A stretch of 64,000 bases of DNA, taken from the NCBI RefSeq assembly GCF_000315625.1, contig NW_005434647.1:480936-544935 (forward strand). Reading direction: 5' to 3'. The DNA comes from Guillardia theta CCMP2712. Lineage: Eukaryota > Protista > Cryptophyta. The notes below the pieces were generated by a model, which was given only the letters and a program-made list of their open reading frames with translations, did not search any database and had not been told where the DNA came from. This document shows, in pieces, positions 1 to 39,914 of the stretch; positions within the stretch are counted from its first letter, which is position 1; every line of letters starts with the position of its first letter. A program made the position numbers and the translations under genes.

Positions 1-1522
1 TATAAGCGCGATGCTTCTTTGCGCAAATGAAGTGACTGGCAGGCTCTCGGTACGAGGGAAACTTCGAGGAGCACAGGTGCTGCATGGCCGTATCGCCGCG
101 GAGATGCTGAGGCTGCAGGAAGGTTGAACGGAACGGGGACTATGGAGCACAGCAACGGCGACCGTTACGAGGGTAATGGAAGTTGAAGGCTTTGTGAGGA
201 GAAGTGAGAGTTCGATCGTGACATCAGGCGATTGGTGTAACGGTAATCGAGACGGTCATGGGGTCTACACGTACGGCAACGGTGACAGCTACAAGGTCGG
301 AGGCCATGCGGGAGCGCGAGGGACTGAAGAGCATGGCAGGGAAGATTTGCGAGGAACTTGCGGTCAGGACCAGGAGTCTTCTTCCACCATGAAAGGTGTG
401 GCGACGAAATGTTAGAAGAGAGGCCGTGACTGAGAAGCTTCAGCGGCATGAGCTACAATTGCGACTGGTCCAATAACATCCCAACCATCTTGCCGGCCAA
501 GTTGCGAGGTGCGTGCATGGCTCTGCGAAGTTGAGGAGGCGGCAAGGGTTCTGGTTTTTCACGAAATGGTCAGCGGAAACAAGCGAGAGGCTGGAGTTCG
601 AGGCGGCAAGGAAGGAGAAGATAGCCCAGGAGCCTCAATCCTCTGAGGCGCAAGAAGGGGATCAAGAAGCTGAAGGAAGTGAGGAGAAAGGAAACGAGGA
701 AGAGGCGGAAGCTCCACAAGGACCGAAACCTCTTGCTGAGCTCCTCTCGCAGGATTTTGCCGCTGGTCACAGTCCCATGTACGCTGTTCACGTCTCCTCA
801 CACATTTCAGGGAGCGAGATTCCCCGCATGGTGATTCAAGTATGCTCAGAGGATGGCACAGCACAGACCGGAGAGTCAGGTACTAGAAACTCATCCGAAT
901 TGCAGAGCTGATCGAGTGCCAAGGACGGCTCCTCGAAGTTACTTTCGGTGTCTTCGAGCGGGAAGAGGAGGAAGGTAAGCAGGAGGAGCAACTTCTCGTG
1001 GACTTTGGTGATGAGAATATGCCGCAGAGGCTGGGAAGGAGGGCGAGGCAGAAGCGGAGGCTGCCGACGAGGTTCAGGCAGACAAGGGTAAGTTCAAGAG
1101 ATATCCCAGCAAGGCCTATCCTCTGCAACAAGAGGCCGCTTCGAATGCGGAGAAAGACAAGGAAGGGGCCGAAGAGTCTGCAGCAGGTGAACAGCTGAGA
1201 AGAGCAACGCAGAGCTCATCCTTTTGATGGCAGAGAGATCTCGTCCTTACCCTCCGACGTTTGTCATCGGAGGGATCAAGATGGCCGACGGGGTTGCAGT
1301 CCTGGAGGGCTTGAAGTTGCCCCGGGAGGTGGAAGGTCGATCAACCCAAAGTGACGCTCTTGGATGTGCATGACATGCTCGACAGCGGGGGCCTATCGCC
1401 TTCGGATCGGTTGTGTGTACCAGAATTGTTTCCAAGACGTTGAGGTATGGCGCAGCTGCTCTGTTTGCAGAGGGTGTGTAACAACTTGACAGGCCTTGTA
1501 TCTTCTTTTCAATGTGAGCTAG
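1..1522 (+). CDS. MORN1: MORN-repeat protein, MORN1-like (5' end outside window, multi-exon)
   Basis: Spliced reading gives MORN repeats GSRYEGNF, GTGTMEHSNGDRYEG and DWCNGNRDGHGVYTYGNGDSYKG. It continues QVCSEDGTAQTGESG|RLLEVTFG, resembling the post-MORN region of MORN1. Probable stop TAG at 1520-1522. Confidence 0.65.
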
Positions 1523-1673
1523 CATAATTGTAAGAGTAGGAGAAATAAAAAATGAGAACAGAATCAACTTAAAGTCCTCGATCACACCTCAAAATCGTGA
1601 AGCTACTCACTCTCAACGAAGTCCACAATATGGGCAGGAAAATTCAGTCGTTACCATGAGAGGCCGCTTACAC

Positions 1674-2210
1674 TCAGATTTCCTCCTTGGTTTGCTGCTC
1701 TTTCTTCCTGGCCTTGTCCGCTTTTAGAGTTCCATGCACAGCAACTCCCTGCGAGAAACATGAGGGGCAGGAGGAACGAAGCAGCTTCTTGCCTTGGTGG
1801 TGCCACCGTATATCTCGTGCGTGTTCTGGTAAATGTTGGGATCCCACGGCACCTTAGGGTGCTTCGACTCGTGATGCATCTCCATGTTCTTCAGGCTCGG
1901 AGCTTGCATCATACACAGCGGGCATATCAGTCTACGTGAACAGGTCAAAGGACATCAGGAGTTTGACCTGCAAGACTCACTTGGCATGTCCTGCCTTTCC
2001 TCCGAGCCTGTCTTCGAGACCAGCCTTTCCTCCCCCCATGTTCTTGTTCGCCAGCTTATTCTTCTCCGAGATTTCCTTGGCTGTGTGCTTGGCTGAGACA
2101 CCTTTCCGCCCCCCTCGGAGCCGGAGAACGTGTGCCTCGATGCCCTCGTGGGATCCTGCGGTTTCGAGAAGCAACGCAAGAGCCAGCACGAGGCTGAAGA
2201 TGCGCTGCAT
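1674..2210 (-). CDS. MBS: Methylene Blue Sensitivity (MBS)-like C2H2 zinc-finger protein with N-terminal signal peptide and LRLRGG motif; 3 exons
   Basis: Exons 2210-1981, 1931-1793 and 1748-1674 give MQRIFSLVLALALLLETAG...HVLRLRGGRKGVSAKHTAKE...NMGGGKAGLEDRLGGKAGHAKLICPLC...MEMHHESKHPK...GVAVHGTLK. The KHTAKE, GGGKAG, GHAK-CPxC and HHESKHP motifs are characteristic of plant/green algal MBS. Confidence 0.85.
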
Positions 2211-2914
2211 GGCTGCTTGAAAACGAGCGATGAAGGAGAGCAAACAGAGAGAAGAGTGGAGGAGAGAGAGACTAGCGAAGGAAGAGAACCAGGAGGAGGG
2301 AGTGGAGGGAGGGAGGGAGTGGAGGGAGGGAGTGGAGGACGAGCGGGCGCAGCAGGCAGAAGCCGGGGAAAAGTGCCAAAGAAGTACAAGGCATGCGTGC
2401 CCCTCGTCCCCACTCCACCCAGTCGCTAAAATCAGCGATCAGATCAGCGATGCTGGGAGCTATGTTTGATGAAGCTGACAGTGTGCGGTGGAGAGAGGAG
2501 GAAAACGATCCGTGGATCAGTAGGACGAGGAGAGAGACAGAAGGAAGTACACGGAGGAAGAGGAGAAGGGGAGGGGGAGGGGGAGAGAAGAGAGGGAGGG
2601 AGGGGGGGGGGGATAGGGAAGGTCGACAAAAGACACTGAGCAAGAGTGGGAAGGAAAGAGGGGGGGGGGATGGAGAGGAAGGTTTCGAGTGAGGTTAGAT
2701 GGTCAGGAAGATGCGACACCCTCAAGCTGTAGAGTAGGGGCAAAAGAAAAGATGAAGGGAGCAGGCAGGGAACATTGCAATGTGTAGAACGAGATTCTGC
2801 GATTATGCCAATTGTTAATCTTGTTGGATGCAGGTTTTGTTCACGACTTGCTGTCAGATGCCATGGTATCTGAATTGACTCGATCGAGGAAAAGTTAGCA
2901 GGGCAATAATATCG

Positions 2915-24202: not shown

Positions 24203-26773
24203 TTACAGGTCCTCTTCCGAGACCCCCTGGGCCTCTTCCTCCCGTCTCTTGTCCTGCCTCATGCTTGACCTCGTGAGATCTTCGTACTCCTGCTTCACAT
24301 TCCACGACCTCCCAGGGAAGTCGGTCACTCTTCTCGACTCGTTGAGCACCCGCGCCTTCGCCATGGCCACGTCATCTGCGAGCTGCCATGACTGCTGGGA
24401 CTTGCCAGGGGCTGCTGCACCAGGCTGAAGGATGCCGGGCGATGGCACGAAAGGAGTAGCTTGAGGCTGCGGCGTCTGCGGGAGAGGGACGTTGGGGACC
24501 GGGTTAGTCCGCCCATCGGCCACGGGGTACTGCGCCATGGGGTACTGCAAGCGGTGGCGCTGGGTGAGCTGGTGGATCCTCTGCTTGTCGATGAGGCGAC
24601 GGACGAAGCGAAGGTTCTTGTCGCTGGCGGTGTGGGAGGGAGCGAGGGAGATGGCCTGCAGAAGGATCTCCTCGGCCTTCCTCAGGAGCCCGTTGCTGCA
24701 GTGAACTACCGCCAAGTTGCTCATGGTGTCCACACTGTGAGGCTGCAGGGTGAGGGCTCGCCCCAGCATCTCCTCTGCCTCAGTGTCGTTGCCCCACACT
24801 TGCGCGAGAAAGAAGCCGTAGCTTGTCAGGCTGGCCACGTGGTTGGGCTCAAGGCTGACTGCGAGCTTGAAGTTCTTCTCGGCTTCTTGGCACAAGCCTT
24901 CGCACGTCTGCTTCACCTGATGGTACGTCTCCTTGGTGATGTTGGCATGCTCTCTCAGCGCCTTGTGGTGCAGCACCAGCCCCAGGTTGTTCAGAACACC
25001 AGGGTTTTGAGGCTCCAGCGCCAGCGCCTTCCTGTAGTATTCCTCTGCCTCCTCAGTGTCGTTCCGATACAGCCACTGGATGTTTCCCAGGTGCATCAGG
25101 GCCTTCACGTGGACCGGGTCGAGCTGGAGGGTTCGGAGGTACATCACCTCTGCTCCCACCAGATCGCTCCTCACGTTCTCCAGAAAACACGCAAACTCGA
25201 ACTGAAACTCCGGGAGGAAGGGGAAGCCGTCGGCTGCGCGGTTGTAGTACTTCTCTGCCATCCTCGCGTCCTTCCTCCGCTCGAGGAAGATCCTGGCAAG
25301 GGCGTTGGTAGCATGCGAGTTCTCAGGGTCGGCGGTAACGGCTCTCCCAAAGAGGTTCTCCGCTGTCTCCCAGTCCTCGTCCTGCATCTTCACACCCAGC
25401 TCGTACAGGGCTGAGCTGTGCGAGGGATCGACACTGATGGCGGCGACGAAGTAGTTCTTCGACGTGTTGCTGTCATTCTTGCAGTCCTGCACAAACTTTC
25501 CGTACTCGTAGAGGATTTCCGCGTTGTTGGGGTTGGCTCGAAGTGAAGTGACATAGACGGCCTCTGCTTCCTCCAAATTCCCGTCCATGACGTAGGTCTC
25601 CGCGGCCCCCTTGAGATACTTGCTGCACTCGGGCTCACGGATCATCAGCCTCTTCAAGATCTTGAGGGCAGAAGCGCTGTCATCCCTCCTGTCTCTCAGG
25701 AAGATGGCGTAGTCGAACAGGCAGCCGTTGTCTCCGGGAGCGAGCTGCAATGCGCGTCGGTAGAGAATATTGGCTCCTCCATAGTCTTGTTTCGCATCCT
25801 CCAGGAACCTCGCGAAGCAGATGGCCGCCTCTCTGTTGTTCGGGTTGGACTGCACGGCTCGTGAATACACTTCCTGTGCACCATTGATATCCTTCTTGAC
25901 GAAGCACAAGGCGCTGCCGTAGCCCATGAGCGCTTCAGGGTCTGCAGGAGCAAGGTTCACCGCACGGGAGAAGCAGTCAACGCAGGCCTCGTCCCTTCTC
26001 TCCACCAGACTCTCGTCGTATGCTCCATACACATTCGTCTCCGACCGTCGCTGCACATTCAACCAGCCCAACCGCTTCCAGGCCTCCGGTCTGTCCGGCT
26101 CAGACTCGGTGGCACGGTCGAGAAATTCTTCAGCCACGACGACGTTGTGCCGGATGTCCTCGTAGATCACCGCAAGCTGCAGGAGCGAGGTGTAGTCAGT
26201 GGGGTCAACGGTCAGCAGCTTGTGATACGACTCGATGGCTTCATCGACGTCGCCATCCTTGAGACATTCGTTTGCGAACTGCATAATGTTGTCGAGGGTG
26301 AGAACTTCGGGCAGCTGCCTCCTCCTCTTGAAGGTCAACCTCTGATATTCCTCCTCTTCCTCCTCATCCTCATCGCGGGTGATCAGAGCGAGTTGGGTTG
26401 CTTGTTCTCGTTCTTTCCTCTTCCTTTCCTGGATCTCTTGCATCTTTCGCTCCTGCTCAGCCACCTGTGCTCGCTCCTCTCTCATCTTCGCTTCGATCTC
26501 TGCTCGAAGATCCGAACCTCCTCTCACATGCTCAAGATACTTGAGACACTCAGCAGAAGACCTCGAGGTCTTGAGGCAAATCCTAGCCTTGCGTAAAGTG
26601 ACAACAACACCTGCTCTCCATGCTCGATAGGACTCAAGATCGGGATGGGAGCTGATCCGATTCCAAGTAGAGCAGAACTCCTTTGGCACCGCATGTGCAT
26701 CGCTCACATGACCATGACCTGACCCCTCGATGCACAGACACGACATTGCCAGCACATAGTACAACACCTTCAT
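24203..26773 (-). CDS. Multi-TPR protein with N-terminal signal peptide; intronless
   Basis: 856-aa ORF with hydrophobic N-terminus MKVLYYVLAMSCLCIEG, a coiled-coil region and many TPR units (e.g. AEEYYRKALALEPQNPGVLNNLG). Confidence 0.85.
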   Translation of the reverse strand: MKVLYYVLAMSCLCIEGSGHGHVSDAHAVPKEFCSTWNRISSHPDLESYRAWRAGVVVTLRKARICLKTSRSSAECLKYLEHVRGGSDLRAEIEAKMREERAQVAEQERKMQEIQERKRKEREQATQLALITRDEDEEEEEEYQRLTFKRRRQLPEVLTLDNIMQFANECLKDGDVDEAIESYHKLLTVDPTDYTSLLQLAVIYEDIRHNVVVAEEFLDRATESEPDRPEAWKRLGWLNVQRRSETNVYGAYDESLVERRDEACVDCFSRAVNLAPADPEALMGYGSALCFVKKDINGAQEVYSRAVQSNPNNREAAICFARFLEDAKQDYGGANILYRRALQLAPGDNGCLFDYAIFLRDRRDDSASALKILKRLMIREPECSKYLKGAAETYVMDGNLEEAEAVYVTSLRANPNNAEILYEYGKFVQDCKNDSNTSKNYFVAAISVDPSHSSALYELGVKMQDEDWETAENLFGRAVTADPENSHATNALARIFLERRKDARMAEKYYNRAADGFPFLPEFQFEFACFLENVRSDLVGAEVMYLRTLQLDPVHVKALMHLGNIQWLYRNDTEEAEEYYRKALALEPQNPGVLNNLGLVLHHKALREHANITKETYHQVKQTCEGLCQEAEKNFKLAVSLEPNHVASLTSYGFFLAQVWGNDTEAEEMLGRALTLQPHSVDTMSNLAVVHCSNGLLRKAEEILLQAISLAPSHTASDKNLRFVRRLIDKQRIHQLTQRHRLQYPMAQYPVADGRTNPVPNVPLPQTPQPQATPFVPSPGILQPGAAAPGKSQQSWQLADDVAMAKARVLNESRRVTDFPGRSWNVKQEYEDLTRSSMRQDKRREEEAQGVSEEDL

Positions 26774-39199: not shown

Positions 39200-39914
39200 A
39201 TGGTGGCAATTCCTCTAGCTATGGTGCTGTGCCTTGCTGCCTGCCCCATGCAGGCCAACGCCTTTGCGTTTCCTGCAGTTCCTACATTACCATCAAGGAG
39301 TGCTGGTAGCAATGGCATGTCATTTCGGAACAGGTCCCCAGCACTTCGCATGGTGGACACTATGGGAGAGGAAAAATCAAAAGTCAAAAATGTTGAAGAG
39401 GTGACAAAGAAGTGGGGCCTGGAAGCAGGTCTCTTCACTGCACTAACGTGAGATATCATCGTGTTGTGATATGAAAACTGACTTTTGGAAAGCAACAAGA
39501 ACAAGGAAGGGCCAGACGCAAAGCAGCTCTTGGCAAAATATGGTTCTGCATACTTGCTGACATCCATTTCTCTTTCACTTGTCTCTTTTGGAATTTGCTA
39601 TGTAAGCATTTTGTTTTGTTGCCTGTTGAATTGGATGACTGTTTTCAGGTTTTGGTCGACAACGGGGTTGATGTGGCCGCTTTATTGTCCAAGGTTGGAA
39701 TCACAGCCAATGGAAACACGGAGACTGCTGGGACTGTTGCTATTGCCTATGCAGCGCACAAGGCTGCTTCACCCATTCGGTTTCCTCCCACTGTTGCTCT
39801 GACGCCGTTGACAGCCAAGGTACACTCGTTGTCTTGGCTTTGATTTGAATGACATTGCTTCTGCAGTACTTGTTTAACAAGAAGGTTGAAGACTCTTCAG
39901 ATGAGCAGCAATAA
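39200..39914 (+). CDS. Plastid-targeted DUF1279/FAM210-like membrane protein
   Basis: Signal peptide ending MQANA-F followed by an S/R-rich transit peptide. Core motifs KKWGLEAGLF, AKQLLAKYGSAYLLTSISLS and AIAYAAHKAASPIRFPPTVALTP. Confidence 0.88.

What the first reader, a model, noticed from the sequence alone, without database searches (positions are those of the whole stretch)
2109..2210. Signal peptide + ubiquitin-tail mimic (HVLRLRGG) fused to the natural N-terminus of an MBS protein: candidate DUB-type maturation of periplastid proteins
Seen: the minus-strand protein reads MQRIFSLVLALALLLETAG-SHEGIEA-HVLRLRGG-RKGVSAKHTAKE. Known: ubiquitin ends HLVLRLRGG and DUBs cut after GG. Plant MBS1 starts directly at MTGKAKPKKHTAKE, has no presequence and acts in singlet-oxygen signalling outside the plastid. 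The conserved KHTAKE therefore places the ancestral start at the GG. There is no Phe after the predicted signal cleavage site, unlike the stromal DUF1279 protein at 39200. Inference: the protein enters the ER, is moved into the periplastid compartment (the remnant red-algal cytosol, imported via ERAD-derived SELMA), and is matured by a ubiquitin C-terminal hydrolase-like enzyme that uses the 8-residue mimic as a processing tag. From memory, LRGG-like motifs have been noted in presequences of complex-plastid algae, but I know of no established mechanism.
Basis: partly seen in the sequence, partly recalled or inferred. Interest (0 to 1): 0.85.

Follow-up and report, generated by a model that had tools for sequence, protein, structure and literature searches.

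The report
Ubiquitin-tail box ends periplastid import leader
The only MBS-type zinc-finger gene of the cryptophyte alga Guillardia theta makes a protein with a signal peptide and a short leader ending in ubiquitin's last seven residues (VLRLRGG), placed exactly where the ordinary protein starts; dozens of other genes carry the same leader ending, including all six proteins already shown to enter the relict endosymbiont cytoplasm, so it is probably an undescribed cut site.

Summary
The window belongs to Guillardia theta CCMP2712. On the minus strand lies a three-exon gene for a 147-aa MBS-like protein (CDS 2210-1674). Transcript contigs from three studies cover the ATG at 2210.

The protein reads signal peptide (aa 1-19), 8-aa spacer, VLRLRGG (2129-2109), then RKGVSAKHTAKE. 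Homology to leaderless MBS proteins begins at the GG. Cryptophyte orthologues (Baffinella, Rhodomonas) and environmental relatives keep [LM]R[LI]RGG while the rest of the leader cannot be aligned.

The box is genome-wide:
- I counted 68 true ΦLRLRGG sites, against 10 for the reversed peptide.
- 54 of them lie outside ubiquitin genes. 25 of those sit 11-91 aa after a signal-like start, against 0 of 10 controls.
- All six G. theta proteins localised to the periplastid compartment by GFP fusion end their leader in (LR)LRGG.

A USP14/Ubp6-like deubiquitinase gene carries the same kind of leader.

So periplastid targeting is well supported. Cleavage after GG by a ubiquitin-specific protease is plausible but untested. 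I found no description in the searchable literature. This scan had already noted the same motif on other pieces of this genome; I reached it independently before looking.

The parts
2211..2348 (-). 5' UTR. Contigs map to at least 2291 and carry 37-57 further letters inside a CT-rich repeat. There is no ATG in this stretch.
2154..2210 (-). Signal peptide, aa 1-19 (MQRIFSLVLALALLLETAG). It has an uncharged hydrophobic core, and T and G stand at -3 and -1 of the proposed cut.
   Evidence: hydropathy 2.98 over 10 aa; the -3/-1 rule was applied by eye
2130..2153 (-). Variable spacer SHEGIEAH (aa 20-27). The first residue after the presumed signal cut is Ser, not aromatic, and the spacer contains two Glu.
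   Evidence: spacers of orthologues are unalignable
2109..2129 (-). Ubiquitin-tail box VLRLRGG (aa 28-34), identical to ubiquitin residues 70-76. It is the proposed leader/mature junction and cut site.
1981..2108 (-). Rest of exon 1: N-terminal MBS domain RKGVSAKHTAKE...GGGKAGLEDRLGGKAGHA(K).
1932..1980 (-). Intron 1, GT-AG, 49 nt.
1793..1931 (-). Exon 2: zinc finger CPLC...HHESKH.
1749..1792 (-). Intron 2, GC-AG, 44 nt. The joint is ambiguous by up to 3 nt.
1674..1748 (-). Exon 3 coding part (GVAVHGTLK...EEI) with the stop codon at 1674-1676.
1491..1673 (-). 3' UTR as far as the transcript contigs reach.

Best explanation
The gene encodes the only MBS-type zinc-finger protein of Guillardia theta, made as a preprotein.

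Proposed route:
- An ER signal peptide takes it into the lumen of the outermost plastid membrane. This is inferred from sequence.
- The short leader that remains (SHEGIEAH-VLRLRGG) takes it across the periplastid membrane into the periplastid compartment, the relict red-algal cytoplasm that holds the nucleomorph. This is inferred from the fact that every experimentally localised G. theta periplastid leader has the same ending.
- The ubiquitin-tail box marks the exact border between leader and mature protein.

Most likely mechanism: a ubiquitin-specific protease in that compartment cuts after GG, as such enzymes cut natural ubiquitin fusions. That would release RKGVSAKHTAKE..., one or two residues shorter than a normal MBS protein. 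This step is inferred and not shown.

The box is a module shared by dozens of unrelated genes. It is kept at the protein level only.
For: Organism and gene model:
- The organism is identified by the partial NCBI model GUITHDRAFT_45817 on a contig of 751,997 bases, the length of C27.
- The gene model and the leader are transcribed.
- It is the only MBS gene in the genome.

Junction and conservation:
- Homology to plant MBS1 and to the leaderless MGRKGV proteins starts at the GG.
- The box is invariant while spacers range from 5 to about 50 aa and cannot be aligned. This holds in Baffinella frigidus, Rhodomonas salina and eight environmental relatives.

Genome-wide:
- 54 ΦLRLRGG sites lie outside ubiquitin genes, and 25 follow a signal-like start, against 0 of 10 reversed-peptide controls.
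- The 25 sites use 25 different codon strings, and the DNA upstream is at most 43% identical between any two loci.
- The box often abuts the native start: LRLRGG|GKEK in EF-1 alpha and LRLRGG|MKLFTHNLL in a Trm112-like protein.

Localised proteins:
- All six G. theta proteins localised to the periplastid compartment by GFP fusion (ugg-t, EF-1 alpha, 14-3-3, RRM1, CyP, Ubc8) end their leader in (LR)LRGG (supplement of PMC12136025).

Candidate enzyme and literature context:
- A USP14/Ubp6-like gene has a signal-like start, LLSLRGG, a UBL domain and a USP Cys box and His box.
- The leader peptidase for periplastid proteins is only postulated (PMC5756292).
- The diatom periplastid deubiquitinase ptDUP is missing in cryptophytes (PMC12412216).
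Against: - No mature N-terminus has been measured, so cleavage at GG is not shown.
- From my own knowledge, cellular deubiquitinases bind the ubiquitin fold and cut bare LRGG peptides very poorly. The leader has no such fold: Pfam ubiquitin does not match it and it is only 34 aa long.
- USP14 is normally a proteasome-bound chain trimmer, not a precursor-processing enzyme.
- In some leaders the box is nearly all that remains after the signal peptide (h-region to box 11-17 aa). It could therefore be the targeting determinant itself.
- Cleavage after GG would expose Arg here. In 16 of the 25 loci it would expose residues that are destabilising N-degrons in a normal cytosol.
- Signal-peptide calls rest on a hydropathy script, not on a trained predictor.
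Confidence: 0.55

Rival explanations
1. The box is a sorting or retention signal, or simply the functional core of the transit-peptide-like leader for passage through the ERAD-derived translocon. It is not a protease site. The leader is then kept, or is cut elsewhere.
For: - In several loci the box is almost the entire leader after the signal peptide.
- Its two Arg supply the positive charge such leaders need.
- G. theta leaders with the box work in a diatom.
Against: - A charge patch would not need an invariant LRLRGG at the amino-acid level in 25 genes with 25 different codon strings.
- It would not need exact placement at the ancestral Met.
Confidence: 0.22
2. The leader is cut at or near the box by a peptidase that is not a deubiquitinase. 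One candidate is an M16 presequence peptidase of the MPP/SPP type, which reads an Arg at -3 or -2.
For: - Arg stands at -3 of the proposed cut (R-G-G|).
- A 'TPL peptidase' is postulated but unidentified.
Against: - M16 enzymes have loose motifs (my own knowledge). An exact copy of ubiquitin residues 70-76 is not expected from them.
- The relaxed forms still keep LRGG: MSLRGG and IPLRGG.
Confidence: 0.15
3. The protein is an ordinary secretory or ER protein, or the N-terminus is a decayed ubiquitin left from an old ubiquitin-MBS fusion, and the tail has no present function.
For: - There is a superficial resemblance to ubiquitin: MQ-IF at the start, EGI in the middle and the tail at the end.
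- Ubiquitin fusions to small proteins exist in algae (my own knowledge).
Against: - Pfam ubiquitin does not match exon 1.
- None of the 58 homologues carries a ubiquitin domain.
- Orthologous leaders share only the box.
- The same box heads dozens of unrelated proteins, including six with proven periplastid targeting.
Confidence: 0.05

Closest known systems
Bipartite topogenic signals of periplastid (PPC) proteins in cryptophytes and diatoms (Gould et al. 2006; ASAFind 2.0, PMC12136025)
   Same: A signal peptide is followed by a transit-peptide-like stretch. The first residue after the signal cut is non-aromatic, and acidic residues are tolerated.
   Different: The published descriptions score only the first 20-25 residues after the signal cut and define no C-terminal element. 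Here the leader ends in a conserved ubiquitin-tail box at the mature start.
Natural ubiquitin fusion precursors (polyubiquitin, Ub-eL40/UBA52, Ub-eS31/RPS27A) processed by deubiquitinases
   Same: ...LRLRGG stands directly in front of the first residue of an unrelated mature protein.
   Different: Those precursors carry the whole 76-residue beta-grasp domain and are cytosolic. Here only seven residues are present, behind an ER signal peptide.
Viral polyprotein LXGG sites cut by papain-like or deubiquitinase-like proteases (e.g. coronavirus PLpro)
   Same: A short ubiquitin-tail-like peptide, without a ubiquitin fold, serves as a protease site. This shows the principle is feasible.
   Different: Those are viral enzymes acting on viral substrates. 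No homologue of them was sought or found here.
SELMA ubiquitin system of complex plastids (plastid ubiquitin sUbi/PUBL, ptE3P, ptDUP)
   Same: A ubiquitin system and deubiquitinases are at work in the periplastid compartment during import.
   Different: In that system ubiquitin is attached to lysines of the preprotein and removed again. ptDUP is absent from cryptophytes (PMC12412216). A ubiquitin tail encoded within the leader is not part of the model.
Plant and algal MBS1 (METHYLENE BLUE SENSITIVITY 1) small zinc-finger proteins
   Same: The mature part is homologous from KHTAKE through the CxxC...HxxxxH finger to GVAVxG.
   Different: Those proteins start at Met-(Thr/Gly)-Gly-Lys and have no leader.

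Membership tests
MBS1 / small C2H2 zinc-finger family | N-terminal K-H-T-x-x-E ... GGGKxG..DR.GG..GH.K domain | tested here: met
   K36, K41, H42, E46 and G59 are invariant in an 18-sequence alignment that includes a named plant MBS1. A phmmer search found 58 homologues.
MBS1 / small C2H2 zinc-finger family | Single zinc finger CxxC...HxxxxH recognised by Pfam | tested here: inconclusive
   The motif CPLC...HHESKH is present. Pfam zf-met2 scores only E = 0.058, 13.9 bits against a cut-off of 27.
Periplastid bipartite targeting leader | N-terminal ER signal peptide | tested here: met
   There is an uncharged 10-aa core with mean hydropathy 2.98, and T and G stand at -3/-1. No trained predictor was available.
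Periplastid bipartite targeting leader | No aromatic residue or Leu at +1 after the signal cut (this distinguishes periplastid from stromal leaders) | tested here: met
   Ser20 follows the presumed cut. The rule is as quoted in PMC4494062 and PMC12136025. The result depends on the predicted cut position.
Periplastid bipartite targeting leader | Localisation in the periplastid compartment | not testable with these tools
   Indirect only: 6 of 6 experimentally localised G. theta leaders share the LRGG ending.
Ubiquitin / ubiquitin-like domain | Beta-grasp domain of about 72 residues | tested here: not met
   Pfam PF00240 does not match exon 1 at E <= 1. The whole leader is only 34 aa.
Ubiquitin / ubiquitin-like domain | C-terminal tail LRLRGG | tested here: met
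   VLRLRGG is identical to the tail in the genome's own ubiquitin genes.
Deubiquitinase substrate | Cleavage of the peptide bond after GG | not testable with these tools
   No N-terminal proteomics data were held.

The most novel reading that the evidence does not exclude
In cryptophytes, the long-postulated peptidase that removes the leader of periplastid and nucleomorph proteins is a ubiquitin-specific protease. It reads a seven-residue ubiquitin-tail box written into the leader. Organelle presequence removal has thus been handed to the ubiquitin system, and one cut could also dispose of any ubiquitin attached to the leader during SELMA transport. Traces of the same logic (LRGG at the leader end) in diatom periplastid proteins and in chlorarachniophyte MBS orthologues would make it more general.
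Probability: 0.4. Interest if true: 0.9.

Novelty: new variant of a known kind. Interest (0 to 1): 0.8.

Why it matters
It is an open question how proteins of the periplastid compartment lose their leader, and how that compartment is told apart from the stroma beyond the missing Phe. A conserved box at the exact leader/mature border offers three things:
- a simple sequence marker for predicting the periplastid and nucleomorph proteome of cryptophytes;
- a testable cut site;
- a candidate enzyme class.

If a deubiquitinase does the cutting, it would be the first organelle presequence peptidase drawn from the ubiquitin system. It could also explain why cryptophytes lack ptDUP.

For this gene in particular, the result means that G. 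theta's only MBS homologue works in the relict endosymbiont cytoplasm or nucleomorph, not in the host cytosol. It also shows that the public gene model (partial, starting at VLRLRGG) misses the leader.

Tried and rejected
- **Decayed ubiquitin.** I tested whether the 34-aa leader is a shrunken ubiquitin (MQ-IF...EGI...LRLRGG). Pfam gives no match, no homologue has ubiquitin upstream, and orthologous leaders share only the box. Rejected.
- **Upstream exon or other start.** Transcript contigs run through the ATG, and no ATG lies in the 5' UTR. The next in-frame Met (aa 58) would delete the conserved domain. Rejected.
- **Second, leaderless MBS gene.** None was found.
- **Leaders on other deubiquitinase genes.** I looked 2.5 kb upstream of the UCH/C12, OTU and C48 genes and of 25 other USP genes. 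No signal-like start plus xRGG was found in one open frame. Leaders split by introns would be missed, and JAMM enzymes and nucleomorph genes were not examined.
- **Literature.** No paper holds LRGG or RLRGG together with periplastid, nucleomorph, Guillardia or plastid. Stork 2012 and Deschamps 2006 are not held. No proteomics supplement is held for PMC6559170.
- **Raw RNA reads.** Run X16 hardly covers this gene, so the transcription start could not be mapped.
- **Complex prediction.** Not attempted: the catalytic domain is split over exons without a single reference, and the substrate is a short peptide.

Full report
**What is there.** The minus strand of 2109-2210 reads MQRIFSLVLALALLLETAG-SHEGIEAH-VLRLRGG, followed by RKGVSAKHTAKE, exactly as reported. 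The window is G000:C27:480936-544935 of an 87.1-Mb assembly in 669 contigs. A homology search returned the partial NCBI model GUITHDRAFT_45817 of Guillardia theta CCMP2712. It is 95 aa long, starts at VLRLRGG, and sits on a contig of 751,997 bases, which is the length of C27. The organism is therefore a cryptophyte, and the public model lacks the leader.

**Gene model and expression.**
- Assembled transcript contigs from three studies lie on the locus with two joints, skipping 1932-1980 (GT..AG on the minus strand) and 44 nt at 1748-1791. The second joint can be shifted by one base to a GC..AG intron.
- All three contigs reach 2291 and carry 37-57 further letters inside a CT-rich repeat that the tool skipped.
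- No ATG lies between 2211 and about 2348, so the ATG at 2210 is the first one in the mRNA.
- The spliced product has 147 aa: leader, N-terminal MBS domain, one CxxC...HxxxxH finger and a GVAVHGTLK tail.
The one raw-read run barely covers the gene, so the exact start is not mapped.

**Where homology starts.** An exhaustive phmmer search with exon 1 found 58 relatives. Ordinary members start M-(T/G)-G-K-A-K-P-x-K-H-T; one example is the protein named METHYLENE BLUE SENSITIVITY 1 from Cannabis. The nearest leaderless relatives start M-G-R-K-G-V-K-T-K-H-S. In the alignment their Met falls on the first G of the GG and their Gly-2 on the second. The box therefore sits exactly at the ancestral N-terminus.

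**Conservation across species.**
- A group of relatives carries N-terminal extensions with a hydrophobic stretch, a spacer of about 5-50 residues that cannot be aligned, and then an almost invariant [LM]R[LI]RGG directly before RKG(V/I).
- Named members are Baffinella frigidus (AVLRLRGG) and Rhodomonas salina (ELLRIRGG).
- Eight environmental sequences show the same pattern.
- None of the 58 homologues has a ubiquitin domain, and Pfam ubiquitin does not match exon 1. The idea that the leader is a decayed ubiquitin is rejected.
- G. theta has no second MBS gene.

**Genome-wide test.**
- A degenerate DNA pattern for Φ-L-R-L-R-G-G has 101 matches in the genome, against 58 for the pattern read backwards.
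- After decoding the codons by eye, 68 are true ΦLRLRGG. About 15 of these lie in ubiquitin genes already found with PF00240.
- The reversed peptide GGRLRLΦ, which has the same composition, has only 10 true sites.
- I fetched the 53 sites outside ubiquitin genes and the 10 controls.
- I applied a fixed criterion: a Met in the same open frame, followed within 35 aa by a 10-aa uncharged window of mean hydropathy at least 2.2.
- 25 of 54 sites (including this gene) pass, against 0 of 10 controls. The box lies 11-91 aa behind the hydrophobic core. Fisher p = 0.005. Several more look the same by eye but fail the strict rule.
- The mature parts are unrelated proteins that normally live in a cytosol. 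In EF-1 alpha the box replaces the initiator Met (LRLRGG|GKEKHH...GHVDSGKSTTTGH). A Trm112-like protein keeps its own Met (LRLRGG|MKLFTHNLL). A J-domain protein is a third example.
- The 25 boxes use 25 different codon strings, and the 150 nt before them are at most 43% identical between any two loci. The module is therefore kept by selection on the peptide, not spread by DNA duplication.

**Which compartment.** The supplement of the ASAFind 2.0 paper (PMC12136025) prints the full sequences of its periplastid reference set. Six G. theta proteins in it were localised by GFP fusion in Phaeodactylum (Gould et al. 2006). All six end their leader in the box:
- ugg-t: MSLRGG|AGSD
- EF-1 alpha: MLRLRGG|GKEK (this is my locus L045)
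- 14-3-3: ALRLRGG|VDGE
- RRM1: PLRLRGG|FRGD
- CyP: ALRLRGG|GLPY
- Ubc8: IPLRGG|ANPT

Reference proteins added only by BLAST (NTRC, GLRX2, sTLP-1) and hemE, which is only listed as an example periplastid protein, lack the box. The authors scored only 25 residues after the signal cut, so the box mostly lay outside their window.

In this gene the first residue after the presumed signal cut is Ser, and the spacer holds two Glu. Both fit the published periplastid type rather than the stromal type. I therefore rate periplastid or nucleomorph targeting of this MBS protein at about 85%.

**How it may work.**
- Shown: the box is conserved, it is placed at the mature start, and it is tied to periplastid leaders.
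- Inferred: it is a cut site read by a ubiquitin-specific protease.
- The leader peptidase of periplastid proteins is only postulated (PMC5756292).
- Cryptophytes keep a ubiquitin system and 26S proteasomes in that compartment but lack the diatom deubiquitinase ptDUP, which a recent phylogenetic study calls surprising (PMC12412216).
- I looked upstream of the deubiquitinase genes found in the genome. One gene has the leader. On C13 its first open frame reads signal-like start...RRTSLLS|LRGG|, then a UBL domain whose best solved relative is the UBL of USP14 (E = 1.5e-5). A Cys-box exon follows, whose best relatives are USP14 and yeast Ubp6 (E = 3.7e-16), and a His box lies further on.
- So at least one USP enzyme is apparently sent to the same compartment. 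The UCH, OTU and C48 genes and 25 other USP genes showed no such leader within 2.5 kb.

**Doubts.**
- Cellular deubiquitinases normally need the ubiquitin fold and cut LRGG peptides poorly (my own knowledge).
- USP14 is a proteasome-bound trimmer.
- In some genes the box is nearly the whole leader, so it may itself be the targeting element.
- A cut after GG would expose Arg here. In 16 of the 25 loci it would expose residues that are N-degrons elsewhere.
- A metallopeptidase reading Arg at -3 is a fair rival.

**Beyond cryptophytes (leads only).**
- Chlorarachniophyte MBS orthologues also carry a signal-like leader ending at the same junction: FLCRLRGG in Bigelowiella, VVLHLQGG or ILRHLQGG in Lotharella-type sequences, and ASTVGG in one more.
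- A tree of the short mature part groups them only weakly (81/78) with the cryptophyte clade and the MGRKGV proteins.
- Two Thalassiosira periplastid reference proteins end their leader in LRGG: TrxH (GVLSLRGG|VVHE) and protein 9466 (VIFDLRGG|AKKK).

**Novelty.** Four full-text searches combining LRGG, RLRGG or LRLRGG with periplastid, nucleomorph, Guillardia or plastid found nothing. Subscription papers are not covered. This scan had already noted the same motif on other pieces of this genome, with three follow-up reports reaching the same reading. I reached the genome-wide result before looking, and I tested their claims here. The leader type is known; the conserved ubiquitin-tail box at its end, and the processing it implies, appear undescribed.

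Noticed in passing
G000:C13:4753-8000 (+); loci L098 and L113: A USP14/Ubp6-like deubiquitinase gene. Its first open frame has a signal-like start and a leader ending LLSLRGG, followed by a UBL domain and then USP Cys-box and His-box exons. It is a candidate periplastid deubiquitinase.
   Followed up: partly
window 24209-26773 (-): An 855-aa TPR-repeat protein with a signal-like start (MKVLYYVLAMSCLCIEG) and ...KYLEH|VRGG|SDLR 67 aa after the hydrophobic core. It may carry a relaxed form of the same leader ending.
   Followed up: partly
proteins P0087, P0021, P0075, P0088, P0029: Chlorarachniophyte MBS orthologues (Bigelowiella longifila, Lotharella oceanica and relatives) have signal-like leaders ending FLCRLRGG, VVLHLQGG, ILRHLQGG or ASTVGG at the same junction. 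Their mature part shares the derived GG-RKG start.
   Followed up: partly
supplement file 19 of PMC12136025 (Thaps3a_19991, Thaps3a_9466): Two Thalassiosira pseudonana periplastid reference proteins end their leader in LRGG: TrxH (GVLSLRGG|VVHE) and protein 9466 (VIFDLRGG|AKKK). A short form of the box may therefore exist in diatoms.
   Followed up: no
window 1674-2210 (-): The public model GUITHDRAFT_45817 is partial. It starts at VLRLRGG, ends at ...GGTT, and so lacks the signal peptide and the last exon.
   Followed up: yes
window 1400-1567 (+): A convergent plus-strand transcript has a 48-nt GT..AG intron (1443-1490) and poly(A) ends at about 1563-1567. It overlaps the 3' UTR of the MBS gene. 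One assembled contig (X4) joins the two transcripts.
   Followed up: no
window 1749-1792 (-): The second intron of the gene uses a GC donor (GC..AG, 44 nt), confirmed by three transcript contigs.
   Followed up: yes
loci L018-L065 (25 signal-like LRLRGG sites): The residue after GG is G 6, E 5, K 3, I 2, Q 2, and F, H, M, S, A, Y, R once each; it is never Pro. Most would be destabilising N-terminal residues in a normal cytosol if the cut is after GG.
   Followed up: no
proteins P0098 and P0101: Leaderless environmental MBS proteins that start MGRKGVKTKHS are the closest relatives of the cryptophyte mature part. They show that Gly-2 of the ancestor became the last Gly of the box.
   Followed up: partly
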